A stretch of 64,000 bases of DNA, from the sequence record MK250028.1; one strand, 5' to 3'. Numbering within the stretch: the stretch's first letter is position 1; each line of letters opens with the position of its first letter. Below, piece after piece: positions 1 to 54,485 of the stretch. The notes beneath the pieces are model-generated. The model made no database searches. It had not been told where the DNA came from and worked only from the letters and a program-made list of their open reading frames with translations. Position numbers and translations under genes: made by a program.

Positions 1-630
1 AATAGTGCAACTGTTGATTCAAAAACAACACCTATGCCAATGTCAGCAAATCTTAATAATAAAATTGAGCAATCTGTTAAATGGACAAAAAAATATACAT
101 ATAATGCAGATACCTGTACATTTACAGAAAGTACATCTGGCACAGAAACAGTAAATACAAGTAAATTACCTTATATTACAAAAGATGTGAAATCAATGTC
201 TTATAATGGTACAACAACTATTGCACAAGCTGCAAGCGCTATCTAGGGATTCTTACCATATCAATACTTAAATACGTTAACAACAAGTAATGCAATAACT
301 TATTTAATGTGTTAGGCTACAGGTTATAAATATTCATCAAATAAAGAATTACCTGCATATACATAGGCATTCTCTGAACTTATACCATAGACAACAGAGG
401 CGGAAAAACCAGCGTCAACATAGAAATTCCCTATGTTTATTGATATTACTTTGAATAATACTACAATTACATTTAAATTGATAAGTGTTACTAACGTATT
501 TGATTCTGCATATTTGTTTACTCAGCGTACATATGGTACAGAAAATAGTGGATTAAACTATATGAAATTAGGATCTAATTCTTTATATGGTACATGGCAA
601 GCGTCATCAACAAATTTAAAGACTCTTTAA
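1..630 (+). CDS. Hypothetical protein, 5'-truncated by window edge (likely late/structural)
   Basis: ORFs 34..246 and 433..630 share a frame and are joined only through TAG codons; ends TAA at 628-630. Confidence 0.75.
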
Positions 631-6600: not shown

Positions 6601-9347
6601 TTGTAGATGCATTTTATATTAATACGATATATATTAATAAATGGATATGGTATGATAAAGATAAAAAACAAATAATCAGTTGTAATAATATTAATAGATT
6701 ATTTGGTCAAGGTTCAAAGAATTTATATATGACAATAGATTGTTTATATCCTATACTGAATAAGATCTAGTATTTAATTGGAATTACTACTTGGCAGACG
6801 ATAATATATCCTATATATTCAGGCTCTTCATAGAAATTTGATGTATATACAATTCTTACAGATGAAAAGAAAACAGAAACTTCATGGAAGGATAAAACAA
6901 CATATACAAAATCTTATACATTTAATGGTACTATTGGTAATTTGATTACGAATCAAGTTGTTCCTGCTCGTGCCATATTTGTTAATGAAACAGGTGCTTC
7001 TCATACAGTAGATTCTCAAGATAATACAGGTGCAATATATCCTACTGCAATGACAAGATTCAGCGGTATTTCATTCTGTGCATCTAATGTACAATGGGAT
7101 TTATATGGATTATTTAGTAAGAAATGGAAATTATAGTATATAGATTTTTTCCAAACATTTGGATTCTCTACAGTAACAGAATATGAAGATTTATTTAATG
7201 CTAAATTTATGCCATCAACATTAATAGATATTAAACATAGTTTAAATACATCATTCAACACATCTGTAGATTATACAAGATTCTTAGATTTTAACACATT
7301 AATTACTAATTATAATAATTCAGTTCCATCAAATGCAATGTTTAATTACGAAAATGGAGATTCTCTTAATTATGCTACAGGATTAACATTTACTAAACAT
7401 ATTAGCAGTGATACATTTAAAGAATGGATGGTATATATATTTAAAGCAAATAATGCTCAAGGTATAACTAACTTATTCAGAAACTGTAATATATTAGTAA
7501 GTCAAGCAGAAGCAAATAATAAATGTGATTTCAGTATAGAAACGATATTTAGCGATTATGGCGAAAATCTCGTAATAAATTAGAAAATACATAATATATA
7601 TTGTTTGTTCTATAATTTACATTGTTATATTAAAGATAAGTATGATATAACTAAAACTAGTTAGTCTGCTGAAGTATAGTATATGACATTTGGTACAGAT
7701 ATGTTTAAATACCTTCCAAATATAACTACTGTTTCATCAGCGTTTACAAATAACTATTGGAATGACCCTATACCATTTAATGTATTTAATAAACGTTATA
7801 AATGTGATGATACATATTATTATCTTGAATTCTTTGAAGGTACTGATATATTAGTAACTGATGAGAATAAAGGTCTTAATGAATATAAAGATAAAAAGAA
7901 AATAAGAAAGAAGATAAAATATGTTTCATATAGTTATAAATAGGTAATGAATTAGGTTAATTCATGTTTCGCTAATATTCATTTTAATCCTGCTTATATT
8001 TCTAACAGATATACTGAAGGTTCTGATATTATTAAAGAAGCAGGTATTAATTATTATCAATTTATAAATGATGATAACACTGTTATAAATGATGATGAGA
8101 AAATATATATTTCTGAAAAAATAAAAGTATTATTACGTTCTACTGGTAATAATAGTGATTATATATACCCATCATATGAATATTATGATACATTAAATTT
8201 GCATGGTGCATTCTATGAAGGTAATTTTGAAAAAGCCGGCACATCTACTGGTGTTACTAATGTAACGTCTTCTATTCAAAAAGCGCCATTAACAAAGTCT
8301 GTATCTGAATATTTAGAATCACTTATAGTTGCGCCAGATTTATTATATGGATGTCAATCATCTGCATCAATATAGGGTATAGTTTCTCAATATGGTGTAT
8401 CGAAAGATATGTTAACTGGTATTTTACCTGCTCATTTCTATAAGCAAATGAAAACATTAGTAGGTGGTACATATGAAGTGTTTACTGGATGTCTTGTAAT
8501 ACCAAATTATGTTGGTACATATGTAAATTATGATTCTAACGGAACATTGAAACTTCGTTATAACATATATACATTTATACCAGAAGAATTTGTAAATTCT
8601 GATATGAATAATTTATAGAATATGTTTAGATTCTATATACATTGGCCAAAACAAGGTCAAACAGAATCAGGCGTGCAAACATATGATTTTTATGTATTAT
8701 CTACAAGCAATTCATTTGGAAGTAATATAACGTCATTAAATAATGCATTCCCTGTTTCATCAGTTGTTTCATATCAATCATATGGAACTATATCAATAAA
8801 TTATCAAACAGCTAACAGATCAATTCACTATAATTTACAATGTACATATTAGACTCAATCTTATGAAGCATCAAAGAAATCAGAGATATTTGGAACACTT
8901 AATTATGATAATTTGAGATATATATCAGTGTTTGATACAGGCCTTAATATGGAAATATATAAGTCATTAAATGTAACTAATTTAATAACAAGTATAAACT
9001 TATTATATGGTTACTATGGATATATATTTAACTCTTCATATGATACAAGAAATATAATATTAACAACAAATTCAGAAAATAAAAAATATTATTGTATTAA
9101 TGTAAGTGCAAATTATCAATGGCAATCTAATTAGTTATCATGTAATATAATATTCCCTATATGTTCTAACACATCAGAAACAACAAGAAGATTATTATAT
9201 TTCTATGATATTCCATAGAATGCTAAATTTAATACTAACATAAGTATGTTTTCAACTTCAGAAAATAGAGAATATTATAAAAATATGTTTGATAGTATGT
9301 TTACATTCAATGATAATGAAAAATATAGTTATGCTACATATGAATAA
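657..9347 (+). CDS. Giant 2896-aa virion-associated protein with CotH-like kinase domain (~3120-4920) and C-terminal leucine-rich repeats
   Basis: Fourteen track ORFs in one frame; I translated the gaps and found only TAG until TAA at 9345-9347. Kinase motifs IQGSST..HGKN, DIVDSAHSNN, LEGFP, YFMGLYNFNLGR, AFGLVDSVQKN, FYDMDTCLGIDN, WLNSRLHILDAYF; LRR-like units such as YSNLNLINIS, CNKLSSLKL, CPKLQKVTI. Confidence 0.85.
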
Positions 9348-9370
9348 TAATATTTTTATGAATATAATTA

Positions 9371-9403
9371 AGAGAGATATAGATATACTATATCTCTCTT
9401 TTT
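9371..9403 (+). terminator. Intrinsic terminator
   Basis: Stem AGAGAGATATAG/CTATATCTCTCT followed by a T run, after the stop at 9347. Confidence 0.8.
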
Positions 9404-9409
9404 ATCTAA

Positions 9410-9430
9410 AAATAAATATAAAAAGAATTT
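9410..9430 (+). promoter_or_regulatory. Putative late promoter (ATAAATA core)
   Basis: AATAAATATAAAAAGAA shared with 15844-15860 and with 29312-29336 on the minus strand; resembles T4 late TATAAATA. Confidence 0.55.
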
Positions 9431-9442
9431 TTATGAATATAA

Positions 9443-12400
9443 ATGGATAATAAATGTTCAAGACCTGCTTTGATCCATAGCTTTAATCCTAAACCATTCA
9501 AAGATATTGATACAGCCATTTTCGCGCTTAATAAGAAAGATTTAGCAACAGGTGAAATAGCTATAGCATATTATAAGGATGTTGATGAAACGAGAGGAAT
9601 CGGGGCAGTAATCGCAACTGGTAATATTTTACCAGGTGGAAATCAAATATTCAAGAATACTGCATATACTGATAAACTTATAAAAGTTGTAAAAGAATCT
9701 ATTGAATCTAACTCTGTTGATATAAGTGTAATCGAAGAAAATGTAAATAATAACATTGCAGATATTGCATTAATTAAGGAACAACTTAAATCGTTGTCTA
9801 TTGATTCAAGTAATAATCAATCTTCCGTTGATAATAAGATGAATGAAATCAATGAAATCATCAGTAAAATGAAAGAAGATATGAATAATATCATAGATAA
9901 TATTCATAAAGTTGTTGCTGATGCATCATAGTCTCTCACTGATTCTACAGATACTATATATACCGATTTCAAAGGAGCAGACACTTCTTTAAAAAACTAT
10001 ATAGATGATGAAAACTTAAAAATTTCTCAAAAAATTGATGATATTTCATTAAAAAATGTAGAAAATAAGCAAGAATTATTAGATAAAATTAATTCCAATA
10101 CATCTATACTCGAAACTACAATTTATGATGTTTCAACATAGTTGACTGATGACATTTCTATATTAAACAATAAGGTAGAAACTTATAATAATGACTTAAA
10201 TACATCTTTAACTTATAATGTATCTACATTAAAATCTCTTATATCAGATAATAAGAATTATGTTGATAAAAGAGAAAATCTTATCAGAGAATATATTGAT
10301 TAGAAAGATAATCAATTAATATGGCTAATAGGTGATACTTCTAAACATATTCATTTCCGTATAGATAAAGAAGTTCATGACTTAAATGATAGAATTACAT
10401 CTGAACACCTTGATATGAATAAAGTTGTTGCAGATAATAAAACCGATTCAAAACGCTATACAGATTAGGAAATATCATTAGCTAAAGATTATGTGGATGA
10501 ACAAACTGAATATCTTAAATCAAATATATCTCAAACTGAGTTAAACTCAAAGAAATATACAGATGAATCTATTACTTCATTAAATAATAAGTTATCAGAA
10601 TCAATTAAGAATACGTCTATATATGCAAAAGATTTATTTGATAACTCTAATGAATATGCAGATAAATTAAATAATTCATAGAAAGTTTATATTGATGATG
10701 AACTTAGAATGCAAGATGAACGTTTAGTTGACAATATAAATTCTGTAAAAGATACTATTAATACAACAAAATCTGAATTAAATGTTTCTATTAATAAATC
10801 ATATGATAATGCAGTAAAATATACAAATAAAGTACATCAAGAGACTTTACAACTTATTAAAGAATATGATAATAAAGTAAGATAGGATTTTTCTGAAGCA
10901 GATATTAAGTTAGACAATAAGATTAATGACACTTCTACATTAATTTGGAATTATATAGGCAATACATCTGATGCTATTGTTCAATTTGTTAAAGATACAT
11001 CCAAATTAAATTGGGATCATACAAATGATACATCCGATGCTATTGTTAAATATATTAATGATACATCTGACGCTATTGTTAAATATATAAATGATACTTC
11101 CGATGCTATTATTCAATATGTAGATTAGCAAGATCAATTATAGAAAAATTATACTGACAAAGAAGTATCTACTTTGAAATCATATGTAGATACAGAAAAC
11201 GCTTCTATTATTGCTTATGTTGATAATCAAGATGATAAAGTATTGAGCGAAGCCTCAATTTATACAGATGGTAAAATTCAGGAAGTAAATAATACTATCC
11301 ATGATCTTGATGAAAAGGTAGAAGATTATAATAGAAATACAAATAAGTTACTTGATGATGTTTCTGAAGGTATTATAAGAGATTATACAACTGCAATTAA
11401 TAATCTTAATCAAGATGTTTCCAGAAATGATACATGGTTATATAACCATATTGAAAAATATAATACAAATTTATCTACTGCAATTACAACTAATGATTCA
11501 GATACTAAAAAATTAATTAAAGATGTTTCTGATCTTCTTGATTAGAAAATTGAAGATACATCAGATATTCTTCAAGGTGTAATAGATGCGTTGAAAATGC
11601 AACATAATACTGATATTACAACGACAAATACTTCTATTATGTCTTATGTTAATAATTATAATACTAGTACATCAGAAATGATTAAAGCAATGAACACTAG
11701 TATTAATACATATTGGGAAAATGCCGATGAGACTATCGAAAATTTACTTACTAATGTTTCTAATGGTATTCTTCAAAAAGTTAATAATATACAAAAAGAT
11801 TTATCTACTTATATTCAAACAGCCGAATCTACTTTAAAATCATTATATGAACAAGCAGATGACGGACTTCTTGGATATATTAATAGTTAGGACGCAAAAC
11901 TTAATAGTAGTATAAATGATATTTCAACAAAGATTGTAAATAAATTTAATAATGATATTAGTATATTAAATGATAAAGTTGATACTAATTTATCTAATTT
12001 AAATACATCTATTAATAGTGTTCATGATATATTATTTAGGAAAATTGAAGATACATCTACTGAAATTGTAACGGCTTTGAATACATCTATTAGTAATATT
12101 AATCAAAAGCTTACTACTAATGTAACTGAAATTTATGATAAGATAGATGACGTTAAAGATGATATTTTTGAAAAACTTAATGTATCTATTAATGGTATCA
12201 ATAAAATATTAACTGATAAAGATACAGCATTAGATAATAAGATTGATAATAAGTATACAACTATTATTAATGCAATGAATACATCTGATGGTATTTTAAA
12301 TGATCGTATTATTAATTTAGAAACAAAACATACAAATGAATTAGATAATGCGGTTAAAACGTTAAATAAATTAGTTTCTGATACAAAGACAGAATTATCA

Positions 12401-14020
12401 GGTGACGATACAGCAAATAAAACAGAATTAATAACAAAATATGATAAGTTGACTTCTGATAATAAGCAAGCTATATCTGATTTGAAAAAAGAATTAATCA
12501 ATGTATCTAATGGTATCATTACAGATTATAAGAAATTATCTAAAGATACATCTACAATGTTAGATAATAAGATTGAAGATATTTCTACTAAGATTGTAAC
12601 TGCATTGAATACATCTATCAGTAATGTATATGATGAATTAACTGGAAACATTTCAACATTATCAATAACTGTAAAAGATACATCAGAAAATATTGTTAAT
12701 AAATTAAATACATCTATTAATAAAGTATTCAGTGATTTATCAAAAGCAGATACATCTTTATCTACACGTATTGATGATGCAAGTAATTTAATTCCTAAAC
12801 CATAGACAGATGCAATTACTACAGTTGATTCACAGAAATATGTATGGAGTAACGGTAATGTAGCATCTGAAAAATGTGTTGTTGGCGCAGGTTAGACAAA
12901 TATTGTAGTAAAAGATAATAAGGTACAGTTTGTATTAGGTGCATGGAATAATGGTGCAATAGGTTTACGTTTTACAGAAATACCAGAAACAAATACAGTT
13001 GCAAATGGTCTTTTATCTGTTGATTCTAAATTGAAGTATGATAATTACGCTAATTAGATTACTACTATTAATTCAGATATTGCAAAGACAAATACTAATT
13101 TGACTTAGGAAATTAAAGATAGAACCAATGCAGATGATTCGTTATAGTTAAAGATTACTACTATTAATGAAACTACAATACCTAATTTACATGAAGCAAT
13201 ATTAACAGAAATTTACAATAAGTATGATCCTGAAATTAACTCTATAAAAAAATCAATCAATACAACGTCTACTACATTACAAACTAATATTGATAATTTA
13301 AGAAAAAATGTATCTACTGAAGCAAAATCTAATCTTGATAAGTTAAATACTAGTATCAATAATAATGTATATACACCGTTGAAAAACTTAATTACTGGTG
13401 AAATTAGTAGAGTTGAAACTGATTATAAAAATGCAGATAGTACATTAAAAAAAGCTATAGAACTTATTAATAATACAACTATTGATTCTAAAGTTAATTC
13501 ACTTAAATCTGAATTAACAAAGAAGTATGATAATGAAATTAGCACAGTAAAAAATACTATTACTAATAATCAGGATAATATTATCAATACATAGTTACCT
13601 AATCTTAAGACAACAATAGAAACAGATTATAATAAGAAGTTTGAAACAGAATCAAATGAGCGTAAGACCACTGATTCATAGTTAAGAACTGATATTGAAT
13701 TGTTAAGTACGAAAGTAGATGGTATTAATACTAATATTGGTGATAACAATACTAATGTTACTAATTTACAAACAACAATTAAAGAACTTCAAGCAACTAT
13801 TATTGAGTTGAATTCACGTATATTAGCAGTTGAAGCATACGGAACAACAAATGTCGATTTTGCAAAACGTATTGAGACGCTTGAATCTAAATACAATAAG
13901 ATCACAGCAATTGAAAGTGATATTACTGGTATTAAAGAGCGACTTGATAATATTGACACTGAACATGAAGAATTATATTCAGGTGTTTAGGATTATAATG
14001 ATTCTATTAATATTAGCTGA
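9443..14020 (+). CDS. Long coiled-coil fibre-like protein A (1525 aa)
   Basis: Seven in-frame track ORFs joined through TAG; ends TGA at 14018-14020; N-terminal GEIAIAYY.D domain shared with the next two genes; coiled-coil character with [DN]xS repeats. Confidence 0.8.
10925..11122 (+). repeat. 33-bp / 11-residue tandem repeat, 6 units (NDTSDAIVKYI type)
   Basis: NDTSTLIWNYI GNTSDAIVQFV KDTSKLNWDHT NDTSDAIVKYI NDTSDAIVKYI NDTSDAIIQYV. Confidence 0.9.
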
Positions 14021-14035
14021 TAATATAAATATATA

Positions 14036-14080
14036 GAAATATGGTGATATAGAAAATAAAAATCTATATCACCATTTTCT
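14036..14080 (+). terminator. Intrinsic terminator
   Basis: Stem ATGGTGATATAGA/TCTATATCACCAT followed by TTT. Confidence 0.8.
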
Positions 14081-14119
14081 ATTTTAGATAAATATTTAAA
14101 ATATAAAGATTTAATATAT

Positions 14120-15778
14120 ATGAATGTTTACGATTCTCCACATATGCATGGAGTAAAACCACATCCATGTCCACCTCCTCCTGGACCACATCATGATCCT
14201 TTTCATCATGATCCTTGTTGTGAACCACCACATCATTGTTTACCTCCACATCATTGTGAACCACCATATGGATTAATCAATCATTATAATAAAGTATGTT
14301 TCAAGAACTATGATGAAGCTGTATATAAATTAAAAATAAAATCATTACTTCCTGGCGAAATTGCATTCGCTTATTATTTTGATAAGAATGCAGAATATGG
14401 TATTAACGCAATTGCAGCTGTTGGTTCTATTAAATTAGGAGCAACTAATATAATCTATGATAACGCTAATGATATTCAATCTCTTATTGAATCCCTTTCA
14501 ACAAAGGTAGATTCAAATAATGAGAAATTTGAAACAATAGTAGATCAATTCGATGATATTAATAATGTTATTAAAGACATTAGTTCTCGTTTACATAAAG
14601 CTGAAGATAAAAATAATTCTTCTAATATTGATGCATCTATTTCAGATATAGATAATAAGATTGATACTATTATTCAAGATAACGTATCAATACATGACCG
14701 TATTGATACCCTTGATTCACAAATGGATCAAGTAACTGATTATATTGCATAGCATGAATTAGATTATCAAGCACTTGATGCATCAGTTAAACAACTTCGT
14801 GTTGATGTAGATTCATTAGGACTAGATGATAAACTTGATGAATTAGATAAGAAGATTAATCAAACAAAAGAAGATATACTTCTTGAAACAAAGGCAGACA
14901 ATGCATCATTAGAAGCTAAACTTACACAAGAATTTAACGGTAAATTACAAGATTATTCTGATTCATTAGATAATCTTAAAGTTGAAATCACTCAACAGAT
15001 TACAGATACAGTTGAACCTTTAAAAACGGATATTTATGATTTACAAGTTAAAACAACTGAATTGGAAACAAATATCGGTAAAGCAAAGGATGAAGCAGTT
15101 ACTGCATCCAAAGAATATACAGATAATCAAATATCAGACAAGATGCAAGGAATTAATAGTTCACTTACTGATATGTCTAATACTATTCATGATTTATCTG
15201 ATTTAATTACCAATGTTTCTACTAATGCAGATAATGAACGTAAAGAATTAAAACGGTATATTGATTAGGTTAAGTCTGATATTGAAGGTGAAAATACTCA
15301 ATTTAAATCTGAAGTAAATTCTGAAATTAATAAACAGAAACAATATATTACAGATACTATTAACGGATTTAAGGCAGAATATACTGCAACAACAGATAAA
15401 GCAATTGATGAAAAAGTAAAGGTTGTATCTGATAAATTAGATAATTATATCAATGAATCTACAACTAAACATTCTGAAATTGAAGCAAAGATTTCTACTA
15501 TTAAAACGGATTTTGCAACATATAAAGGTGAGTTAAACGAAACTATTGCTAACAAAATTGCAGAACAAAATACAAATATGAGAAATTATTTGGATAACGC
15601 AATTTCAACAGATAGATCATACTATGATTCACTTTATGCACGTAAAGATCAAATACCTGTAAATGTTGTATCAGGTGCAGGTGTTACGGTAGAAAACGGT
15701 GTTGTTAATCTTAATGTTGACAGTAATGGTGTATTAACAGTAGGTGGAAAACGTTATCAATTACAACAATTGAATTAA
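14120..15778 (+). CDS. Coiled-coil fibre-like protein B (552 aa) with His/Pro/Cys-rich N-terminus
   Basis: Three in-frame track ORFs joined through TAG; ends TAA; shared LPGEIAFAYYFD domain follows an HPC-rich leader. Confidence 0.8.
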
Positions 15779-15803
15779 TAATTTTAACAAAATTAAATAT
15801 ATT

Positions 15804-15839
15804 AGAAGAGATTATTTTTATAAATAGTCTCTTCTTTTC
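15804..15839 (+). terminator. Intrinsic terminator
   Basis: Stem AGAAGAGATTATTT/AAATAGTCTCTTCT (one G-U pair) followed by TTT. Confidence 0.75.
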
Positions 15840-15864
15840 TTTTAATAAATATAAAAAGAAATTT
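15840..15864 (+). promoter_or_regulatory. Putative late promoter, exact 25-bp copy of 29312-29336 (-)
   Basis: TTTTAATAAATATAAAAAGAAATTT, ending 13 nt upstream of ATG 15878. Confidence 0.65.
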
Positions 15865-15877
15865 AAAACAAATAAAC

Positions 15878-18800
15878 ATGGCAGGATTTATGGATAACAA
15901 ATATGGTTCACATGTTCCACCTGTTGGACTTAATGGTTTCAATAAAATATGTTTTACTGATTAGAAAGAAGCTGAAACTATGTTATTGGATAAGCCGTTA
16001 ATGCCTGGCTAGCTCACATTCGCATATTACTATGATAATGTTGCGACTAATGGTGTAAATGTAATGGCAGCAGTCGGAACATTAAAAGGAGAAGGTTCAA
16101 ACCATATTTTTGTTAGTTATGAAACTATAAATTAGTTAATTGATTCCATTGATGATTCATTTGAAGATTTCGATACTAGTTTAATATATATTCGGAAAGA
16201 ACTTATGAGCAAGCTTTCTGCTCTTGAAGATGAACAGAATAATTTAGTTTTACAGATAAGAGATAATGTTAATAATTCTAATGTAAGTTTTAACGAAATT
16301 TATACTAAATTAGAAGAGTTAGAAACAAATGGTAAACAATATACAGATGAGAAAATTCAAGAGATAAGAGATTATGTCGATACATCTGTAACAAGTAAAA
16401 TCAATGATTATGAAACAGTAGTTTCTGATATGATTTTAGATGCGTCTACAAAATTAGATTAGATGCAAAAAGATTTTGAAGATAAAGCTTAGGATATTCT
16501 TGATCGTAGTAATGAAGTATATGACAATCTTGATGTTTCTCTTCGTAATTATGTTAATAATGAAATGTTAGGAATGCAACAGTTTGTTCATAACGAAACA
16601 ACACAAGCCGTTTTAGATATGAATTCAAAATATGCGGTTTTAAAGAAAGTTGTTGCATCTATTAATTCATCTGTTAATGATATTGATAAAAAACATAATG
16701 ATAAGGAAACAGAATTATCAAGAAATATTGTAGAAACAGCAACACAATTAACAGAAGACTTAGAAATTGCAAATGTTTCAATCATTAGTTATATTGATCA
16801 ATAGACATCATTATTCAATAAGAAGATTGATAATAAAATCAATGAGCTTGAATTTAATACAAAAACTAAAAATATAGATTTAACAAATATCGTAGAAGAA
16901 TACCAACATTCAGTTAAGAATGATATTGCTGTATTCAATGCATCTATGAGAACATATGTTAAATCTAGTCTTGCCACCGTTCAAACAGATGCTAATTCAA
17001 AATATTCAGAATTAAAAACATATGTAACATCAAATGATGCTTCATTATTAAATTATGTTAATGCAATGGAAATTGCACAAAAGACATATATTAATAAACA
17101 TGATTCTGAAATTAAATCTTGGATTGCAACATCAGATACTTCTTTATTCAATATTATTCGTTCAACAGATAGTAAATTAAAAGATGATCTTGACGCGATG
17201 GATGCAAGACACCAATCAATGTATCGTACAGTTGAATCACGTCTTGATAACCTTATTGATGATATTTCTACAGATCTTACTATCATGGTTAATGAATACG
17301 GTAAGGAAGTTAAGAACTTTACACGTAAACATGTAAATGATTTAGAGAATAAAGTTAAAGCACAAAATGTAAGTTTAATTAACTATATTGATGATAAATC
17401 TCAAGAAGCAGTAAATGAAACTCGTTTACTTAATGCTTCACTTAGAACTCAATTAAAGAATACAACAAACTTACTTAACGCAAGTATCAATAATGCTATT
17501 CAATATACAGATGATGAAATATCTAAATTAAAATCATATGTTGATACAGAAAATACTTCTATTATTACTTATGTTAATAATCAAGATGATAAAGTAAGAT
17601 TCTATGCAGATTATGGAGATAATGAAGTTCGTAAATATATTGATGAACTTGAAGAGCAACTTAAGAAATATTCTATTACTGGTGATTCTTCTGTTATCAA
17701 TTATATTAAGTTAACAAAAGAAAATATTGAACAATTTGTTAAAGATGCAGATGATGATGTTTTAAAGAAAGCATATATTCATGATGATGAAATCAAAAAT
17801 GAAATGACAACTGAATATAATGCATTTGTTCGTAAGCAGAAAGATATTGATGCATCATTATTAAATTATGTTAAGAATACAGATACTTCATTATTTAATT
17901 ACATAAAGGATAGAGATGAACAAATAAAGAGATGGATTGCTATTGGTGATACTTCACTTTATAACTATTTCAAAACATAGAATGCATCTTTGTTTAATTA
18001 TGTAAAAACATAGGATACAGAAATATAGAATAATCTTGTTAATAGTGTTTCTAAGATAGAAAATGATATGGCAAAATTCGAGACCAGTATCAATTCAAAG
18101 ATTGATTCTGCTGATATTGCTCTTGATAATAAATTAAATGCTAATAATGCTTCTATCTATACAATTCTTTCTTCTAATGATGTATCAATCATGAGTGCAG
18201 TTAATAAGAAAGATTATGAACTTGAAACAAAATTAAATAATCAAATTTCAGAAGTAAAGAACGAATTAGAAACAAAAGACTCTTCTATTCTTAATTATGT
18301 ATTGAATGCTGATACATCTATTAAATCACAACTTAATATAATTAAAGATACTATTAATAATGATATTAAAGTATCTCTTAAAGAACTTGATACAAAAGTG
18401 GATGTAAATGATGCTTCTATTATGTCTTATATTAATACAAATGACCATAAGATTGGTTCTTATATTGATACAGAAATTAATCGTGTAGAAAATCATTGCA
18501 AATCAAATGATACATCTGTTGTTAATTTTGTAAAAAAAGAAGATTCATCTATAGTTAATTATGTAAATGGTACAGTTAAACAAGAATTACTTGATAGAAT
18601 TAATGATACAAATACATCTATTATTAATTATGTTGCTGAGAATTCATCATTGTTCAATTATGTCGTTAATAATGATACTTTACTTAAAGCACTTATTGAA
18701 AGTAAAGATGGCTCAATTTTGAATTCATTAACAAGCGCTGATGCTTCTATTATTCGTTTAATTGAGAAATATAACTCAGAATTACATAATAAGATTAACG

Positions 18801-21800
18801 CAAATGATTCATCTATTAACTCAAAAGTTGATAAGTATAATTCATCTACATTTAGCCACTTTACATTAAAGGACGCAGAACTTCAATCTAAACAAGAATT
18901 AGCAGATACTTCTATTGTTAGTTTTATTAACACAACTGTATCTGATATGAATACAAGTATCAATGAGACTTTAACAAATATTGATAATAAAGTTGATAAT
19001 GTAAAATCTGATTTAGTGAATACCATTGAAACAAACAATACATCTATTGTTAATTTTGTTAAGTTACATGATACAAGTATTGAGAATATGATTAAGTCTA
19101 ATGAAGAAGTTTATAACTATATCAATACACAAGATACTTCTATCATTAATTTCATTAAGAATAACAATACTGATCTTGATAATAAACTATCAAGAGTTAA
19201 TACTGATGTTAACAATAAGATTGATAATGTTGAATCAGACCTTTTACAGGAAATTGTTAATAAGACAAATATACTTAATACTGATGTAAGACGAGAAATA
19301 GCTAATCTTTCTGATTAGATGAATGATTCTGATACTTCTATTCTTAATTATCTTAAAGCATCTGATAATGAGTTAAACAATAACTTATTGCAATTAGATA
19401 CAAATCTTCATAATGAGTTAGATAATAATAAGGCTGAATTAACTAATAGTATTAATAATGCTATTACTGCTTATGAGAATAAACAAACAGAATTCTAGTC
19501 TAATATTAATAATCAAATTGATACATTTAAAACAGAAGTATCTACAAATATTGATACATTAAATTAGACTATCCATAATGATATGTCTGAGTTAAGTTCT
19601 GATATTAGTACAAAGATTGCTGTTACAAATTCATCTACTATTAATTATCTTCAAAATGAAATTTCAAAGATTGATAATAAAGTTAATAACTAGAATTCTT
19701 CATTATCTGTAGCATTTGAGAACTATAAATCCGCAACAGATACAAGTATTAAGAACAAATTAGATTCATTTGAAACTAATGTAGATAATAAGTTAAATGA
19801 TAAATTTACAGAACTTAATATCACATTAGATACAAACTGGACTAATTTGATTAATTCTAATGAGCAGTTTAAGAATGAAATTCATAATGATATTGCAAAT
19901 CTTGAGACTAATACAAACAATAAGTTAAATGATTTTAAATCTTACGTAGATGAGCAGAATACATTACAGGATGTAAAGAATACATCTGCTATTAGTTCAC
20001 TAAGAACTGATATTTCAACATTGGATGATTAGATCAATACAAGATTAACACTTCACGAAAAGTTATGCGATAATAATATTCAAATTGCAAAGAATGAATT
20101 ATCATCAAAAATTGAAACTGTTAATACATCATTAATTAATTATATCGATTAGCAAGATACTAATATTAAGAATGAATTTGCTGAACGTGAATCAAATCTT
20201 CTTAATTATATCAATAGTTAGGATAATGAGCTTAACAGAAAGATTGATAGCGTTAATCATGATTTAACAGAAACAATTACAGATGTTGATCTTCGCGCAA
20301 CTACTAATATTAATAATCTTCGTACAGATATGAATTATGAAGTATCACGCCTTGATAAGAAGATTGAAGATACTGAAAGAGATATTAGAGCAGATGTAAG
20401 TACAGAAGATAAAAAACTCGATGATAGAATTACATCTGTTGACCATGACATCCGTCAAGATATGGAAACAAAAGATAATGATTTACAACAACAAATAACA
20501 GATGTTAGTAGAGATTATCGTCAGTTTGTTATTGATTCATCTAGCATGATTACAAAACATATTGAGAATGTTTCATCTAATATTCATTAGAGAATAACTG
20601 ATACTTCTGAATGTTTATGGCAATATGTAAATGATACATCTGACGCTATTGTTAATTATTTCAAGAAACAAAATACAGATCTTAAAAATTATTCTGATAC
20701 AGAAGATAATAAATTAAAAGGTAGAATTGAAAATGTTTCATCTAAGTTAATTGATGTTAGCAACGCATTGAATAAACTTATTGGTGTTGGAGACGTTACT
20801 TCTGCTATTGATACATTCCAAGAAATTGAAGAGTTCTTAAAAACGTATACAAATAAAGATACATTAACAAATTTATTAAAGAATAACTCTGATAATGACA
20901 AAGCTTATGCAGATAGTATATTACAAAGATATGATGAATATATAAAGAATTATATTTCTGATGGCTCTACTGATATATATAATTATATTAATAACACTTC
21001 ATCTGCAATTGTTTGGTGGGTATAGGATATTTCTAATAAATTTAAGAAGTATATTGATGCAAGTGACCTTATTCTTGATGGTAAGATTAGTGAATTAAGA
21101 GAAGACCTTAATACAACTAATAATAATATTGATGATTTAAAAGATTATGTAGATCAATAGGATAGAAAAGATAGAGATTATGTTGATGATATATCCACAA
21201 AAATTGTTACATATATAAATTCTACTTCTGATGGTATTGTTAATAACTTTAATGATACTTCTGATGGTATTGTGAGACGTTTTAATGATGCTTCTGATGG
21301 TTTATATAATTTTATTATTGATACATCTAATCGTATTGTTAATAACTTTAATGATGCTTCTGATGGTTTATATAAATTAATATTAGACACATCTGATGAT
21401 ATTGTTCATCATTTTAATGATGTTTCTACTCTTATTGTTAGAAGATTTAATGACGCATCTGACGGATTATTCCACTTAATTATGGATACTTCTAACATGA
21501 TTATACATCGTTTAAATGATGTATCTGATGGTATTGTTAAGAACTTTAATGATACTTCTGACGGTATTGTCAAACGTTTTAATGATGCTTCTGATGGATT
21601 ATATGCATTAATAAAAGATTTATCAACTCGTCATAATGAAGATAACACTTTAATGCAGTCATATATCAATACAGAAATAGGTAAAGTAACCGATTCTTTA
21701 AATACTGAAGTAATACAAATCAATAAAAATATTGGTACAATAGACAAAAAATATGAAGGGAAATTTAAGACTTTATATGAAAATGATATTGCAGACATTA

Positions 21801-23878
21801 ATTCTTCTATAACTAATATTAGAAAAGAATTTGTAACAGCTGATTATAATTCTAGCACACAAATTTATAATTATTTAAAGGAAACGTACAAGAAAGAACT
21901 TACTGGAGAAATAAGTAAAGTTGATAGCAAGTTAACAAATTATATTACGTCTAATGATAAAAAAGTTAGTGATCTTGATACTAAAATTAATAGCGTAAAC
22001 TCTGATATAACAACTTTGATTAATTCAAGTTATAATGAAATTAATGGATATATTAAAGATATAAGTACTCGTCTTGATAAAACTGATAAACGTTTAGATG
22101 ATAGAATTACAGAAATTAATAACACATTAACAAACTCTATTCAAACTAAACATGACACATTAGATGGACGTATTACAAAAGTTGATACTGATTTAAAAGA
22201 AAGTATTAAATCAAAATATGATTTGGTTGATGGACGTATTACTACTGTAAATGAAAATATTATTAAACGTATAGATCAATATAATACATCATTAGCAGGT
22301 TATACAGACCAAGAAATCAAAACAGTTAATAATGCCATTAATAAAGTTAAATCTGATTTAACACAAGAGATTACTAATAATGTAACTAATATTGATAGTT
22401 CTATTACACGTATTGATAATTATCTTGAACGAGGTTACTGGACAAAAGTTACTAATTATGTTGGTAGTGAAATAACAAAAGTTGATGAAAAGATTACTAA
22501 TCTTAAATCTGAAATCAATAATTCATTATCTAAAGATTATGTAACAAACGCATCACTTAATGATTATTATAATAACACTATTAAAAAATATGTTGATGAA
22601 CAAGATGCATTATATAATACATCCGTTATAGATATATCTAATAGATTAAAGACAACAAATGATAATATTAAATCATTAAATGATAAATTAACTGCATTAA
22701 CATCTGATAATATTGATGGAACTATCAATACATATAAAGAAGTTCAAGATTTCTTAAACTCTATATCTGATACTACTACGCTTGTAACATTATTGGCAAA
22801 TAATAAAAATCAAGCTATTGAATCTGCTAATCAATATACAGATAGTTCTATAAATAATTTCAAGAATACATATGTTAAACCTAAATTTGATAATTATGAT
22901 AATTCAATATCTACAATAAATGGTGACATTAAAAATATTAATGGTAAAATAACTACTAATCAAACTGATATTACAAATCTTACTACCAGAGTAAATAAGG
23001 CAGAAACTGATATTAAAAATATTGATGGCAATATTTCTACTATTACTACTGACATAAATAAGTTAAAAGATTTTCAAACTACTGTCAATAATAAGAATTA
23101 TTTAACAGAAATTACTGTTGCTAATGATAACAAATTAGGTGGTATTAAAACTGGTTATACGCCAACCGGCGCAAATGCAAGTAAGCAATTACCAGTAACA
23201 TTGAATTCTGACGGTCGTGCATATGTAACACTTACAAATTCAGCGGTCACAGGAGCATATACTTATACATTACCAACAGCAAATAATTCTGAACTTGGTG
23301 GAATCAAAACTGGATATACTAATAATGGTAATAAGGTCAAAGTTGAAGTTGATGGTTCAGGAAATGCATATGTTGCTCTTACTGAAACAGCAGTCAAAGG
23401 CGGATTTACTTATACATTACCTACGGCTGGTACAACAACTCTCGGTGGTATCTGCACAGGGTATACTAATAGTGGATCAAATGTTAAGGTTCAGATGAGT
23501 GGTAATAATGCATATGTTGGTATTACTAAAGATGCTATTGTTAGCGCTCTTAGTTATACACCTGCAAAAGGTAATTCAGATGGCTCTAATACGTATACAT
23601 TACCTAAGGCAACAGGTTCAACATTAGGTGGTATTCAAGTAGGCTTTACACAAAGTACATCTGGTTCAACACTTAATCTTCCTGTTAAATTAGATTCAAA
23701 TGGTAATGCTTATATTAGTATTAACTTAACTGATTTATAGAATATTGGTGTAATAACAAATAATAATATTAATTCACATGTAACATAGGTTATGTCTGAT
23801 GACACTGCATGGGTTACTCAATCTCAATATGGAAATATCACAGATAAAGGTAGTAAAACTTATTACATTTATGAATAA
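15878..23878 (+). CDS. Giant coiled-coil fibre-like protein C (2666 aa) with C-terminal fibre repeats
   Basis: ATG at 15878; eight in-frame track ORFs joined through TAG; ends TAA at 23876-23878; N-terminal MPGQLTFAYYYD paralogous domain; C-terminal YTLPTA..LGGIKTGY repeats. Confidence 0.8.
21185..21613 (+). repeat. 33-bp / 11-residue tandem repeat, 13 units (NDASDGLYxLI / NDTSDGIVxxF)
   Basis: Exact 11-residue periodicity on translation. Confidence 0.9.
23108..23725 (+). repeat. Four ~47-aa phage fibre repeats (LPTA..LGGIxTGY..V.LDS.GNAYV)
   Basis: LGGIKTGY twice, LGGICTGY and LGGIQVGF, each followed by a G[NR]AY[VI]/NNAYV element. Confidence 0.85.
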
Positions 23879-23890
23879 TAAATTTATATA

Positions 23891-23935
23891 TAATAAAAGA
23901 GGTATAGAAAATTAAAATTCTATACCTCTTTATTT
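23891..23935. terminator. Bidirectional terminator between convergent genes
   Basis: AAAGAGGTATAGAA/TTCTATACCTCTTT stem with A and T flanks. Confidence 0.85.
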
Positions 23936-24284: not shown

Positions 24285-25484
24285 TTACTCAAATAATGCA
24301 TTTGCTGTTTTTACTGTTCCGTCTGTATTAATGTACTTATCCATACCCTTGAATATTTCTGCTTCAATTGCTTTCTTCTTATCATAACCTTCATATTGTG
24401 TACCTTTAAGCAATATTTGTGATTTAAGATTCCAAAAGCTTTCATTTGGAGTATCATTAATCATATATTCTAGTGATTCTTTATAATCTTGTATATATTC
24501 AGGGAATAATTTACTGTTAAGCTCTACCAATGTACGCTGACGCATTAATCTATCACTAAAATCAATATCATTTATATCTCGTTTACATACTTTTTCAAAT
24601 ACCGGTTTTAATTTTGATTCAGAATCAAGTAAATCTTGAACTGTATTAATACCGCATATTTCACGAACTTTCTTTTCCTTACTTGGTGTAATTCTTACTT
24701 TGCGTCCATCTTTATACCAATTATAAAATGAAGGTACACAATCACCATCGTCACCACAAAATATCTTATCAAGAACAACATTATTTGGATTCTCTACAGA
24801 TAATTCCATAATAGTATTTGATTGAAGTAATTGTTTTACATAAGTCTTAGATAAATCTTCATTCTCGAAAAATATATCAAAATTATTATCTGATTTATTA
24901 TACCATGTTTCAAATGCTTCTGGTACATAAATATAACGTTTACTACCTTTACCCTTACCTGTTGTATTATATACTATGCAATATTGATTTGTTACTGTAT
25001 TGAAATCAATAAGTTGTCTAATATCTGCATCTGCGCTTACAATGATAACATTATAATTTGGATATTTCTCAAACACTATTTCTTTACACATACATGCAAT
25101 ATCATCTGCTTCACAATGCTCCACCTTTGCTACATGCATAGAATTCCTTGATAAAATCTTAAGAAGATCATCTGAGCATTTAAATATATTATCCCAATTT
25201 ATAGATTCCGACTTTTTCCTATTTGACTTATAACCTGGATTTATATCGTCTCCGGGAAGAACATCTTTTCTCCATGCATGTTGAGCGTCTGTTGCTATAA
25301 TAACATTTGTAGGTTTGAATATATTAAGAATTGAACATACATCTGTTGTAAACTTATACATGAATGAACGTACGTCTTCTATTCTGTTATATCCGTTGAC
25401 CTAACCATATAAGCTATTCATAAATAATGATCTGAATAAAAGGTTAGACCAATCCAATACTAATAATACTTTCTTACTTTCCAT
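24285..25484 (-). CDS. rnh: T4 RNase H-like 5'-3' exonuclease / flap endonuclease (399 aa)
   Basis: VLDWSNLLFRS (recovered only by reading TAG codon 28), IIATDAQHAWRK, EADDI, IVSADADIRQL, GDDGDCVP. Confidence 0.88.
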
Positions 25485-35300: not shown

Positions 35301-35357
35301 AGTGTCCAAAATATTAAATATACCGTTAAGTGCTTCTTCTGAAGACATTTGTGCCAT
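29388..35357 (-). CDS. Tape-measure-like protein (1989 aa) with a multi-pass hydrophobic block and five ~80-aa repeats
   Basis: Seven in-frame track ORFs joined through TAG; ATG 35357 to TAA 29388-29390; helical Ala/Ile/Leu-rich; hydrophobic segments at 32238-34210. Product name is inferred. Confidence 0.7.
30790..31995 (-). repeat. Five ~80-aa repeats (P[IV]MDxVSKFVDxIMK[LV]AT..Y..GYD..GKP.Y)
   Basis: Translation shows KYIDIIMKVAT, KFVDVVMKLAT, KFVDTVIKVAT, KFVDAIMKLAT, KYVDAILKLAT. Confidence 0.85.
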
Positions 35358-40037: not shown

Positions 40038-40061
40038 AATTATTTTATTTTATATTACATT

Positions 40062-54051: not shown

Positions 54052-54485
54052 NNNNNNNNNNNNNNNNNNNNNNNNNNNNNNNNNNNNNNNNNNNNNNNNN
54101 NNNNNNNNNNNNNNNNNNNNNNNNNNNNNNNNNNNNNNNNNNNNNNNNNNNNNNNNNNNNNNNNNNNNNNNNNNNNNNNNNNNNNNNNNNNNNNNNNNNN
54201 NNNNNNNNNNNNNNNNNNNNNNNNNNNNNNNNNNNNNNNNNNNNNNNNNNNNNNNNNNNNNNNNNNNNNNNNNNNNNNNNNNNNNNNNNNNNNNNNNNNN
54301 NNNNNNNNNNNNNNNNNNNNNNNNNNNNNNNNNNNNNNNNNNNNNNNNNNNNNNNNNNNNNNNNNNNNNNNNNNNNNNNNNNNNNNNNNNNNNNNNNNNN
54401 NNNNNNNNNNNNNNNNNNNNNNNNNNNNNNNNNNNNNNNNNNNNNNNNNNNNNNNNNNNNNNNNNNNNNNNNNNNNNNNNNNNNN
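54052..54485. other. Assembly gap (434 N)
   Basis: Run of N. Confidence 1.

What the first reader, a model, noticed from the sequence alone, without database searches (positions are those of the whole stretch)
9371..23935. Cassette of three paralogous fibre genes: one shared anchor domain, three very different lengths
Seen: the genes at 9443, 14120 and 15878 share a ~65-aa N-terminal domain (F..xxEA...L....L..G[EQ]..FAYY.D.....G.....A.G), then 550-2600 aa of coiled coil. Each has its own ATAAATA-type upstream motif and its own terminator. Inference: three fibres docking through the same anchor type. About 2300 coiled-coil residues would span roughly 350 nm at 0.15 nm per residue, so the virion may carry very long whisker-like fibres of graded length.
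Basis: partly seen in the sequence, partly recalled or inferred. Interest (0 to 1): 0.7.

Follow-up and report, generated by a model that had tools for sequence, protein, structure and literature searches.

The report
Lak megaphage fibre gene family
Three neighbouring late genes of an uncultured gut megaphage (Lak, infecting Prevotella) encode very long rod-shaped proteins that share a previously undescribed 70-residue head domain predicted to form a trimer. They belong to a five-member, length-graded family whose rods use an unusual 11-residue rather than 7-residue repeat. Whether they sit on the virus particle is still untested.

Summary
The window is a Lak-B-type Prevotella megaphage in which TAG is read as glutamine in late genes. 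Read that way, 9443-14020, 14120-15778 and 15878-23878 are intact genes of 1525, 552 and 2666 aa. They share an N-terminal domain of about 70 aa (BLASTP E 1e-21 and 6e-15). Each gene has a terminator hairpin and an ATAAATA motif about 32 nt before its ATG.

New findings:
- Every complete Lak genome carries five such genes (148, 457, 552, 1525 and 2666 aa). Their lengths are nearly invariant between lineages.
- The N-domain has no Pfam, PDB or PHROG match. It has only 69 relatives among 1.84 billion proteins, and the three contexts examined are all Lak-like.
- An AF2 model of the domain is confident (pLDDT 87). A trimer model passes its controls (0.79 against 0.00).
- The rods are helical but hendecad (period 11/3), not heptad. 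They grew through 33-bp duplications.
- The ATAAATA motif is a late-gene signal shared with the prohead protease gene and other TAG-bearing genes.

Most likely these are homotrimeric virion fibres anchored by a common N-domain, up to about 340 nm long. Presence in virions, the docking site and the true oligomeric state remain untested. I class it as a new variant of a known kind.

The parts
9370..9400 (+). Terminator hairpin (13 bp stem, then a U-run) that ends the upstream 2896-aa gene
   Evidence: z -3.9
9412..9426 (+). Late-gene promoter-like motif ATAAATATAAAAAGA. Its ATAAATA core lies at -31 from the ATG.
9443..14020 (+). Fibre paralogue 1: 1525 aa, 18 TAG=Q codons
9461..9682 (+). Shared N-terminal domain of paralogue 1 (residues 7-80)
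10962..11119 (+). 33-bp (11-codon) tandem array inside the rod of paralogue 1, 4.8 copies
12713..13042 (+). Non-periodic insert in the rod of paralogue 1 (residues ~1091-1200), containing Gly and Pro; probably a globular knob. The boundaries are approximate.
14033..14082 (+). Terminator hairpin after paralogue 1 (13+7 bp stem, 9-nt loop)
   Evidence: z -5.5
14087..14109 (+). Variant late motif GATAAATATTTAAAATATAAAGA. Its ATAAATA core lies at -32 from the ATG.
14120..15778 (+). Fibre paralogue 2: 552 aa, 2 TAG=Q codons
14120..14257 (+). His/Pro/Cys-rich N-terminal extension of paralogue 2 (residues 1-46), placed before the shared domain
14258..14488 (+). Shared N-terminal domain of paralogue 2 (residues 47-123). 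This copy was modelled as a monomer and as a trimer.
15804..15835 (+). Terminator hairpin after paralogue 2
   Evidence: z -4.3
15845..15859 (+). Late-gene promoter-like motif ATAAATATAAAAAGA. Its ATAAATA core lies at -33 from the ATG.
15878..23878 (+). Fibre paralogue 3: 2666 aa, 21 TAG=Q codons
15911..16141 (+). Shared N-terminal domain of paralogue 3 (residues 12-88; includes 3 TAG codons)
21223..21597 (+). 33-bp (11-codon) tandem array, 11.4 copies; unit N-D-x-S-D-G-I-V-x-x-F
23078..23875 (+). Beta-rich C-terminal region of paralogue 3 (residues ~2401-2666). It holds four repeats of ~50-60 aa, each with an LGGI(K/Q)xG(Y/F)T core, at residues 2420, 2473, 2522 and 2583. It is preceded by a heptad segment that resembles P22 gp26.
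23896..23931 (.). Bidirectional terminator hairpin that closes the cassette. The next gene converges from the minus strand.
   Evidence: z -5.3

Best explanation
The three genes belong to a five-member gene family specific to Lak-type megaphages. Each protein has three parts.

1. A ~70-residue alpha/beta N-terminal domain. Three copies pack around a three-fold axis.
2. A parallel alpha-helical rod that leaves this cap. It begins as a heptad coiled coil and continues mainly with hendecad (11/3) periodicity, with core positions a, d, e and h. This implies an almost straight, slightly right-handed bundle.
3. A paralogue-specific distal end: four beta-rich LGGIKxGYT repeats in the 2666-aa protein, a small beta domain in the 552-aa protein, and a mid-rod knob in the 1525-aa protein.

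The genes are separate late transcription units. Each has its own ATAAATA promoter-like box about 32 nt before the ATG, its own terminator, and TAG=Q codons.

My inference is that they are virion fibres. They would dock through the common, best-conserved N-domain onto one kind of site on the particle and project their different distal ends about 9, 55, 57, 200 and up to 340 nm away.

Shown here: the paralogy, the periodicity, the length conservation and the late-gene signals.

Supported by models only: the trimer.

Inferred: virion location, docking through the N-terminus, and receptor binding by the distal ends.
For: **Paralogy of the N-domain.** BLASTP gives E 1e-21 and 6e-15.

**Five copies per complete genome.** This holds in Lak-B1, Lak-A1 and Lak-C1.

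**Position in the protein.** The domain lies at the N-terminus (starting within residue 81) in all family members aligned from the profile search.

**Fold and oligomer.**
- AF2 with a 60-sequence alignment gives pLDDT 87 and the order beta-alpha-beta-hairpin-beta-helix.
- The trimer of residues 44-200 of the 552-aa protein scores ipSAE 0.79 in three runs (0.80, 0.79, 0.79). The best of 3 controls scores 0.00. Partner pLDDT is 87 and the runs share at least 91% of contacts.
- The calibration for this mark was 20 of 30 solved pairs passing against 1 of 23 single chains. It holds only roughly here, because I used my own alignment and three copies.
- The interface covers the N-domain plus a/d-spaced helix residues.

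**Rod.**
- There is no proline between residues 44 and 2334 of the 2666-aa protein.
- Spectral power at period 3.67 is 8.0, against 1.0 +/- 0.15 in shuffles. Power at 3.5 is at background.
- Autocorrelation peaks at lags 11, 22 and 33 (0.35-0.38). Positions a, d, e and h are 60-71% hydrophobic.
- There are 33-bp tandem arrays, and most repeat spacings, above all within the arrays, are multiples of 33 bp.
- The last coil before the C-terminal repeats resembles the trimeric coiled coil of P22 tail needle gp26 (E 5.5e-4).

**Constraint on the anchor and on length.**
- The first 100 residues are the most conserved part of each orthologue pair: 0.81, 0.76, 0.87, 0.57 and 0.83, against overall identity of 0.39-0.84.
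- Lengths are 1525/1537, 552/554, 2666/2698 and 148/148.
- There is no indel over about 1750 residues at 65% identity. The few clean indels include two of 11, one of 7 and several of 4 residues; the remaining gaps are of other sizes and cluster in poorly aligned regions.

**Late or structural context.**
- ATAAATA lies at -31 to -38 in 7 of 12 TAG-bearing genes, including the prohead protease gene. It is at that position in none of the 27 TAG-free genes. The background is 0.5 per kb per strand.
- A T4-type portal gene lies about 27 kb upstream, and the prohead protease gene lies in the window.
- Devoto et al. report that TAG use coincides with structural genes.
Against: - There is no direct evidence that any of the five proteins is in the virion. 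No Lak proteome or micrograph was found in the Lak papers searched, and no RNA run holds the region.
- The N-domain fold has no significant structural match, so homology does not establish its role as an anchor.
- Only the trimer was modelled. Dimers and tetramers were not compared.
- The very strict length conservation is more typical of rulers than of receptor-binding fibres.
- A long helical protein may fold back on itself, which would shorten the fibre.
- The cassette is flanked on its 3' side by a non-structural gene (5'-3' exonuclease).
Confidence: 0.55

Rival explanations
1. These are virion fibres, but the shared N-domain is a trimerisation or folding cap rather than the anchor. It would act like a foldon placed at the other end, or would be the distal tip. 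Attachment to the particle would go through the C-terminal ends or through other proteins.
For: The trimer model shows the domain closing the N-terminal end of the bundle. The 148-aa paralogue is little more than the domain plus about 60 helical residues. The C-terminal LGGIKxGYT repeats of the 2666-aa protein are still 60-73% conserved between lineages.
Against: The N-domain is the only part common to five proteins whose distal ends differ. It is also the most conserved part of each. That is the usual signature of the particle-proximal end in phage fibres (general knowledge, not tested here). Folding nuclei of phage fibres are usually C-terminal.
Confidence: 0.15
2. These are not fibres on the particle. 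They would be late intracellular or assembly proteins: length rulers, scaffolds or a cytoskeleton-like system used to build a very large capsid and tail. The conserved rod lengths would set the dimensions.
For: Length conservation is extreme, with almost no indels. PHROG gives weak similarity to tape-measure families (E 1e-3 to 2e-5). The sizes are graded. The genes lie downstream of the portal and prohead protease genes.
Against: The tape-measure hits cover only helical low-complexity stretches. A tape measure is normally a single gene per genome, not five paralogues of 148-2666 aa. The beta-rich repeat domain at the C-terminus of the longest protein and the knob in the 1525-aa protein look like fibre tips. 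Each gene is an independent transcription unit, not embedded among tail-assembly genes.
Confidence: 0.15
3. These are lipid- or membrane-surface-binding amphipathic-helix proteins of the apolipoprotein, perilipin or LEA type. Such proteins also have 11-residue periodicity.
For: Pfam Apolipoprotein (PF01442) scores 104.6 bits for the 2666-aa protein, above the 90-bit cut-off, and 89.7 bits for the 1525-aa protein. The same family matches rods of relatives weakly.
Against: The score is summed over six stretches of a long, biased, periodic sequence. Apolipoprotein repeats are 22-mers punctuated by proline, whereas the rod has no proline in about 2290 residues. The hydrophobic positions follow a narrow a/d/e/h seam typical of a bundle core. 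The N-terminal part models as a trimeric coiled coil. The organism is a tailed phage.
Confidence: 0.03
4. It is an artefact. The long frames would be produced by reading through real stop codons, and the genes would in fact be the short table-11 ORFs.
For: Table 11 gives only fragments.
Against: There are 41 in-frame TAGs but no in-frame TAA or TGA over 14 kb. TAG aligns with Q in orthologues. The periodicity and the repeats run on across TAG codons. Code 15 is published for Lak phages. The same long frames are conserved in 15 curated genomes.
Confidence: 0.01

Closest known systems
T4 fibritin (Wac) neck whiskers (comparison from general knowledge)
   Same: It is a homotrimer with a small N-terminal attachment domain, a long parallel alpha-helical coiled-coil shaft with interruptions, and a small C-terminal domain. 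It is a late gene of a phage with T4-type portal and prohead core genes.
   Different: Fibritin is 487 aa (about 53 nm), heptad-based, and ends in the foldon. No fibritin family was reported by Pfam here. The rods here are hendecad and up to five times longer. There are five paralogues. The N-domain has no detectable similarity to any known family.
P22 tail needle gp26 (PDB 2POH, 3C9I, 4LIN)
   Same: It is a trimeric coiled coil. Residues ~2330-2440 of the 2666-aa protein align weakly with its heptad region (E 5.5e-4; PHROG 1219 E 1e-3).
   Different: gp26 is 233 aa and plugs the portal channel. The similarity covers one short heptad segment only and may reflect a shared coiled-coil pattern rather than common descent.
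Stalks of trimeric autotransporter adhesins (YadA, SadA, BadA) and tetrabrachion: non-heptad coiled coils
   Same: They are very long extracellular rods built from 11- and 15-residue repeats, with many polar (N, S, T) residues in and around the core (PMC13580157; PMC4786415 listed). BadA-type fibres reach comparable lengths (general knowledge).
   Different: Those are bacterial or archaeal surface proteins with signal peptides and membrane anchors. No such domains were found here. No sequence homology was detected.
Mtd_N-type N-terminal domains of phage tail fibres and hyaluronidases (Pfam PF18454; PDB 1YU0, 6X3M)
   Same: It is a small N-terminal alpha/beta domain at the start of trimeric phage fibres. 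Weak signals point this way: VIA Z 2.6 to Mtd residues 5-49; Foldseek rows for HylP and for several phage tailspike N-termini; and Atlas feature score 0.85 to Mtd_N clusters.
   Different: There is no HMM match to PF18454 in any of 60 family members, nor anywhere in the Lak-B1 genome. All structural scores are in the range expected by chance. This is a lead, not membership.
Sets of tailspikes or fibres that share an N-terminal adaptor module (for example the CBA120, G7C and K1-5 types; general knowledge)
   Same: Several receptor-binding proteins in one phage carry a common N-terminal module for attachment and different distal parts.
   Different: Those are short beta-helical enzymes that branch from one another. 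Here the members differ mainly in the length of a helical rod, from 148 to 2666 aa.

Membership tests
Fibritin-like phage fibre (T4 Wac) | Parallel homotrimer | tested here: met
   Model only. Trimer ipSAE 0.79 against a best control of 0.00; pLDDT 87; at least 91% of contacts shared between runs. Other oligomeric states were not compared.
Fibritin-like phage fibre (T4 Wac) | Heptad (7/2) coiled-coil segments | tested here: not met
   The dominant period is 3.66-3.67. Power at 3.5 is at background in the 1525- and 2666-aa proteins. Heptads occur only just after the N-domain of the 552-aa protein and just before the C-termini.
Fibritin-like phage fibre (T4 Wac) | C-terminal foldon, or sequence match to a fibritin family | tested here: not met
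   No such Pfam or PHROG family was reported for any of the three proteins.
Fibritin-like phage fibre (T4 Wac) | Bound to the neck of the virion | not testable with these tools
   No particle data were found for Lak phages in the papers searched.
Mtd_N (PF18454) fibre N-terminal domain | Match to the family HMM | tested here: not met
   0 of 60 members match. There is no match in the whole Lak-B1 genome at E <= 1.
Mtd_N (PF18454) fibre N-terminal domain | Same fold | tested here: inconclusive
   VIA Z 2.6, rmsd 2.4 over 44 residues to 1YU0. The best row overall is Z 3.7, to an SH2-like protein. Atlas feature score is 0.85 with 138 of 256 shared features.
Tail tape measure protein | Significant match to a tape-measure family beyond the helical bias | tested here: inconclusive
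   PHROG 167, 1272, 1533 and 4200 match at E 2e-5 to 2e-3, over helical stretches only.
Tail tape measure protein | One gene per genome, with no paralogues of other lengths | tested here: not met
   There are five paralogues of 148-2666 aa that share the N-domain.
Apolipoprotein A1/A4/E (PF01442) | Score above the curated cut-off | tested here: met
   104.6 bits against a 90-bit cut-off for the 2666-aa protein, summed over 6 stretches. 89.7 bits for the 1525-aa protein. I judge this a periodicity and composition artefact.
Apolipoprotein A1/A4/E (PF01442) | 22-residue amphipathic repeats punctuated by proline | tested here: not met
   There is no proline between residues 44 and 2334. The repeat unit is 11 residues with an a/d/e/h core.
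Trimeric autotransporter adhesin | Membrane anchor and head or neck domains | tested here: not met
   No TAA domain was reported by Pfam. PDB TAA fragments match only at E 0.4-0.6.
Lak-type late (TAG-recoded) genes | In-frame TAG read as Q, plus an ATAAATA box about 32 nt before the ATG | tested here: met

The most novel reading that the evidence does not exclude
Lak megaphage particles carry a five-tier set of trimeric, right-handed (hendecad) coiled-coil fibres, with exactly maintained lengths from about 9 nm to about 340 nm, all plugged into one kind of socket through a fold not seen before. The longest would be among the longest continuous coiled coils proposed for any virus. The graded, indel-free lengths would act as spacers that set fixed reach distances through the thick Prevotella capsule or gut mucus, rather than as ordinary flexible tail fibres.
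Probability: 0.2. Interest if true: 0.8.

Novelty: new variant of a known kind. Interest (0 to 1): 0.55.

Why it matters
Lak megaphages are common in human and animal guts and have genomes above 540 kb. None has been cultured, and the Lak papers I searched describe no particle images or virion proteomes. This family gives concrete, testable predictions about how the particle looks: fibres of about 55, 200 and 340 nm. It also gives antigens, in the conserved N-domain and the distinct C-termini, that could be used to find, sort or image the particles and to look for the host receptor.

The rods are also a natural example of kilobase-scale hendecad coiled coils with polar-rich cores. They grew by 11-codon duplications and are held at fixed length, which is of interest for coiled-coil structural biology and for fibre engineering.

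The ATAAATA box and the separate TAnnTTTG-type box give a first sequence-level handle on early and late transcription in these phages.

Tried and rejected
- **Table 11 and table 4 ORF calls** give only fragments.
- **The window's own assembly is not held**. I used a 249-kb near-identical fragment (G001) and the curated Lak genomes instead.
- **Pfam, PHROG and PDB sequence searches of the N-domain** found nothing credible. The CoV_NSP15_N match in 6 of 60 members (best E 1.2e-4) is treated as noise.
- **Single-sequence AF2 of the whole 552-aa protein** gave pLDDT 47. It was useless for the N-domain and informative only in showing long helices.
- **Foldseek against PDB and BFVD, and VIA wide search,** gave no match with E <= 0.001 or Z >= 5.
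- **ESM Atlas fold search** failed three times because the remote machine did not answer.
I did not trim or resend it, so the C-terminal repeat domain and the knob of the 1525-aa protein remain unfolded and unsearched by structure.
- **Sigma-70-type promoter scan** found fewer sites than in shuffles, so it is uninformative.
- **The 15-mer with 2 mismatches** is not enriched (12 against 6.3 expected). The signal lies in the exact copies and in their fixed position.
- **RNA runs:** none hold the region. Logan contigs from four DNA runs of one study are short pieces at least 95% identical (most at least 99%), with no indels or joints. They break in the repetitive rod and add nothing.
- **Tape-measure, apolipoprotein and read-through-artefact readings** were considered and rated low. 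The reasons are given under the rival explanations.
- **Lak literature** (PMC6784885, PMC8346664, PMC11165621) and the phage G paper (PMC12484599) contain no description of these genes.

Full report
**1. What the window is**

The window has 25% G+C. Under table 11 or table 4 the region 9.3-24 kb is cut into short ORFs. Frame 1 of the three proposed genes holds 18, 2 and 21 in-frame TAG codons and no in-frame TAA or TGA. With TAG read as a sense codon the window resolves into long genes.

The prohead protease gene at 62003-63748 (-) is 98-99% identical to those of Prevotella phages Lak-B1 to B9 and 84% identical to those of Lak-A and Lak-C. The window is therefore a Lak-B-type megaphage of about 550 kb.

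Devoto et al. 2019 (PMC6784885) report code 15 (TAG=Q), a CTA-anticodon suppressor tRNA, and TAG use concentrated in structural-gene regions. My own check agrees. In well-aligned columns between Lak-B and Lak-A/C orthologues of this family, the residue opposite TAG is Q in 31 of 72 cases, K in 12 and E in 7, although Q makes up only about 3% of these proteins. I therefore read TAG as Q throughout. The N run at 54052-54485 was left alone.

**2. The observation**

The genes are 9443-14020 (1525 aa), 14120-15778 (552 aa) and 15878-23878 (2666 aa).

- The N-terminal regions align with 19 invariant columns.
- Pairwise BLASTP gives E 1e-21 (45% identity) and 6e-15 (40% identity).
- Each intergenic space holds a stable hairpin followed by a U-run. 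The hairpins are at 9370-9400, 14033-14082, 15804-15835 and 23896-23931, with z from -3.9 to -5.5.
- Each hairpin is followed by an ATAAATA box at -31, -32 or -33 from the ATG.

**3. The family is larger than the cassette**

A profile of the domain finds five places in every complete Lak genome. Translating the frames gives the lengths below.

| Paralogue | Lak-B | Lak-A1 | Lak-C1 |
|---|---|---|---|
| 1 | 1525 | 1537 | 1537 |
| 2 | 552 | 554 | 554 |
| 3 | 2666 | 2698 | 2691 |
| 4 | 457 | 458 | 205 |
| 5 | 148 | 148 | 148 |

The two extra genes lie outside the window:

- The 457-aa gene is at Lak-B1 425913-427286, about 17 kb upstream on the same strand.
- The 148-aa gene is at about 405.4-405.8 kb on the other strand.

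Between the 457-aa gene and the cassette lie three more giant late genes:

- An 851-aa gene. It is also a hendecad rod but lacks the N-domain.
- A 1570-aa gene. Its 3' end is the open frame at window 1-630.
- The 2896-aa gene at 657-9347.

A T4-type portal gene lies about 9 kb further upstream.

**4. How widespread the domain is**

- The profile searched against 1.84 billion representative proteins finds only 69 proteins with E <= 1e-3. In the family members I aligned, the domain always lies at the N-terminus, starting within residue 81.
- Many hits are short because gene callers stopped at TAG.
- I examined three contexts. One contig needs TAG=Q to reproduce the protein (L026). In a second (L027), two neighbouring gene calls fuse into a single 1362-aa frame when TAG is read as Q. 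For the third no DNA was available.
- Neighbouring genes on those two contigs have their best phage-database matches in Lak phages, at 46-53% identity.
- No member matches a credible Pfam family, and no PDB sequence matches.

As far as sampled, the domain is specific to the Lak lineage and is undescribed.

**5. Structure of the N-domain**

With a 60-sequence alignment, AF2 gives a confident model (pLDDT 87). It has a short strand, a helix, a beta-hairpin, a strand, and then the start of the rod helix.

Fold searches give nothing significant. Foldseek against PDB and BFVD finds no match at E <= 0.001. The VIA wide search has a best Z of 3.7, to an SH2-like chain.

Among the weak rows are several N-terminal parts of phage tailspikes and fibres:

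- AS12 gp42 residues 16-84, Z 3.2.
- Mtd residues 5-49, Z 2.6.
- HylP.
- BFVD rows named tail fibre or hyaluronidase.

A language-model feature search also puts Mtd_N clusters among its leads, at score 0.85. However, the Pfam Mtd_N model matches neither the 60 members nor anything else in the Lak-B1 genome. I keep this as a lead only.

**6. Trimer**

I modelled residues 44-200 of the 552-aa protein as three copies with a 39-row alignment.

- The score is 0.79 (runs 0.80, 0.79, 0.79), against 0.00 for the best of three controls.
- pLDDT is 87 and the runs share at least 91% of contacts.
- In the tool's calibration, 20 of 30 solved pairs and 1 of 23 single chains reached the mark. These counts hold only roughly here, because I used my own alignment and three copies.
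- The interface covers N-domain residues 7-15, 34-42 and 49-74, plus helix residues in a 3-4-3-4 pattern.

The model therefore supports a three-fold cap that continues into a parallel coiled coil. It does not show it.

**7. The rods**

- They are almost free of proline and glycine. The 2666-aa protein has no proline between residues 44 and 2334.
- They are 42% N+D+S+T.
- Single-sequence AF2 of the 552-aa protein predicts helix from residue 94 to 507, with three short breaks.
- The hydrophobic periodicity is 3.66-3.67, not 3.5. Mean power at 3.67 is 8.0, against 1.0 +/- 0.15 in shuffles. Power at 3.5 is 1.2-1.5, which is background.
- Autocorrelation peaks at lags 11, 22 and 33 (0.35-0.38). With an a/d/e/h template, the four core positions are 60-71% hydrophobic and the other seven are 8-16%.
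- The DNA shows the same unit: 33-bp tandem arrays at 10962-11119 and 21223-21597, and dispersed repeats whose spacings are mostly multiples of 33 bp.
- A 93-nt stretch is 86% identical between genes 1 and 3 (family D17), and the rods align over more than 1100 residues (E 6e-25). The rods themselves are therefore homologous.
- Heptad periodicity occurs only just after the N-domain of the 552-aa protein, in the 148-aa protein, and in the last coil before the C-termini. The last of these weakly resembles the trimeric P22 needle gp26.
- The Pfam Apolipoprotein score above the cut-off is explained by the 11-residue periodicity. The proline punctuation that defines those repeats is absent.

**8. 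Distal ends**

- **2666-aa protein:** a Gly-rich, beta-type region with four repeats that carry an LGGI(K/Q)xG(Y/F)T core, at residues 2420, 2473, 2522 and 2583.
- **552-aa protein:** ends in about 40 residues predicted as five short strands.
- **1525-aa protein:** has a non-periodic insert at residues ~1091-1200, followed by another 325 helical residues.

No family or solved structure matched these parts by sequence. I could not fold them.

**9. Constraint**

Between Lak-B and Lak-A/C the orthologues are 39-84% identical overall. The first 100 residues are always the most conserved part.

Lengths are held almost exactly. There is no indel across residues 15-1764 of the 2666-aa protein, nor across about 1400 residues of the 1525-aa protein. 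The few clean indels are of 11, 11, 7 and 4 residues, which are coiled-coil register steps; other gaps of various sizes cluster in a few poorly aligned regions. The exception is the 457-aa gene, which has lost 233 internal residues in Lak-C1.

**10. Expression signals**

ATAAATA lies at -31 to -38 from the ATG in 7 of 12 TAG-bearing genes of the window:

- the three fibre genes;
- 26938 (-);
- 29298 (-);
- 35740 (-);
- the prohead protease gene at 63748 (-).

It lies at that position in none of the 27 TAG-free genes. The background is 0.5 per kb per strand. The 15-mer ATAAATATAAAAAGA occurs exactly three times, each about 19-34 nt before a start codon.

TAG-free genes instead carry TATGTATCTTTGTA, with 6 hits against 0.16 expected. 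By my own knowledge this contains the Bacteroidota -7 consensus TAnnTTTG. The fibre genes therefore belong to the late class together with a head gene.

No RNA run holds the region. DNA contigs from four runs of one study match at 95% identity or more (most at 99% or more) but are too fragmented to add anything.

**11. Interpretation**

The evidence fits a family of homotrimeric fibres with a common proximal module and distinct distal ends. If each rod is one continuous parallel bundle at 0.15 nm per residue, the lengths are:

| Protein | Rod length |
|---|---|
| 148 aa | about 9 nm |
| 457 aa | about 55 nm |
| 552 aa | about 57 nm |
| 1525 aa | about 150 + 48 nm, with a knob between |
| 2666 aa | up to about 340 nm |

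What is not shown is virion membership, the docking site (tail, neck or head), the role of the N-domain as the anchor rather than a folding cap, and the oligomeric state.

The strict length conservation keeps a ruler or scaffold role alive as a rival. No description of these genes was found in the Lak literature I could search.

I rate it a new variant of a known kind (phage trimeric coiled-coil fibres). The new elements are the N-domain family, the hendecad architecture on a kilobase scale, and a graded five-member set.

Noticed in passing
window 35800-61900 (mostly minus strand); sites at 40061, 44780, 46280, 48691, 57735, 60234: The TAG-free gene block carries a different, sharply conserved upstream box, TATGTATCTTTGTA. 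There are 6 hits against 0.16 expected. It contains the Bacteroidota -7 promoter consensus TAnnTTTG. This suggests that early or middle genes use the host sigma factor, while TAG-bearing late genes use the ATAAATA box.
   Followed up: partly
window 14120-14257 (residues 1-46 of the 552-aa protein): There is a His/Pro/Cys-rich extension in front of the shared domain (17 Pro, 11 His and 5 Cys in 46 residues). It is conserved in kind in Lak-A and Lak-C, and shorter Cys/His-rich leaders occur in relatives (P0015, P0018, P0019, P0021). It may be a metal-binding or socket-specific plug.
   Followed up: partly
window 657-9347 (+): This is a 2896-aa late protein with 39 TAG codons, no Pfam or PHROG family and no helical periodicity. 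It lies directly upstream of the cassette and ends at its own terminator. It may be another giant structural protein.
   Followed up: partly
Lak-B1 MK250020.1 427309-429864 (L022:35310-37865), outside the window: This is an 851-aa protein next to the 457-aa paralogue. It is a hendecad rod from residue 1, without the shared N-domain, and has a beta-rich C-terminal domain. It is a sixth fibre-like protein that must attach, if it does, in another way.
   Followed up: partly
Lak-C1 MK250029.1 about 92.0-92.7 kb (L006:6292-6924): In Lak-C1 the fourth paralogue has lost 233 internal rod residues (205 aa instead of 458). It also sits directly upstream of the cassette instead of about 17 kb away, so the three giant genes between them are placed differently or are missing there.
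   Followed up: no
window 20807-20890 and 22724-22810 (residues ~1644-1670 and ~2283-2310 of the 2666-aa protein): A motif (I/L)(D/N)T(F/Y)xE(I/V)xxFL...T(L)xxLLxNN occurs twice and interrupts the hendecad pattern. It may be a hinge or a small helical insertion in the rod.
   Followed up: no
window 29388-35357 (-): This is a 1989-aa protein with 36 TAG codons and no family. About 30% of its sequence windows show helical periodicity near 3.6.
   Followed up: no
window 24285-25484 (-): This is a 5'-3' exonuclease N-domain protein (PF02739, E 1.4e-15) with one TAG codon. It converges on the cassette terminator, so the cassette's 3' neighbour is not structural.
   Followed up: no
window 9443-23878: Pfam Apolipoprotein (PF01442) passes its curated cut-off on the 2666-aa protein (104.6 against 90 bits) purely through 11-residue periodicity. 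Automatic annotation of Lak-like genomes may therefore mislabel these genes.
   Followed up: yes
   Followed up: no
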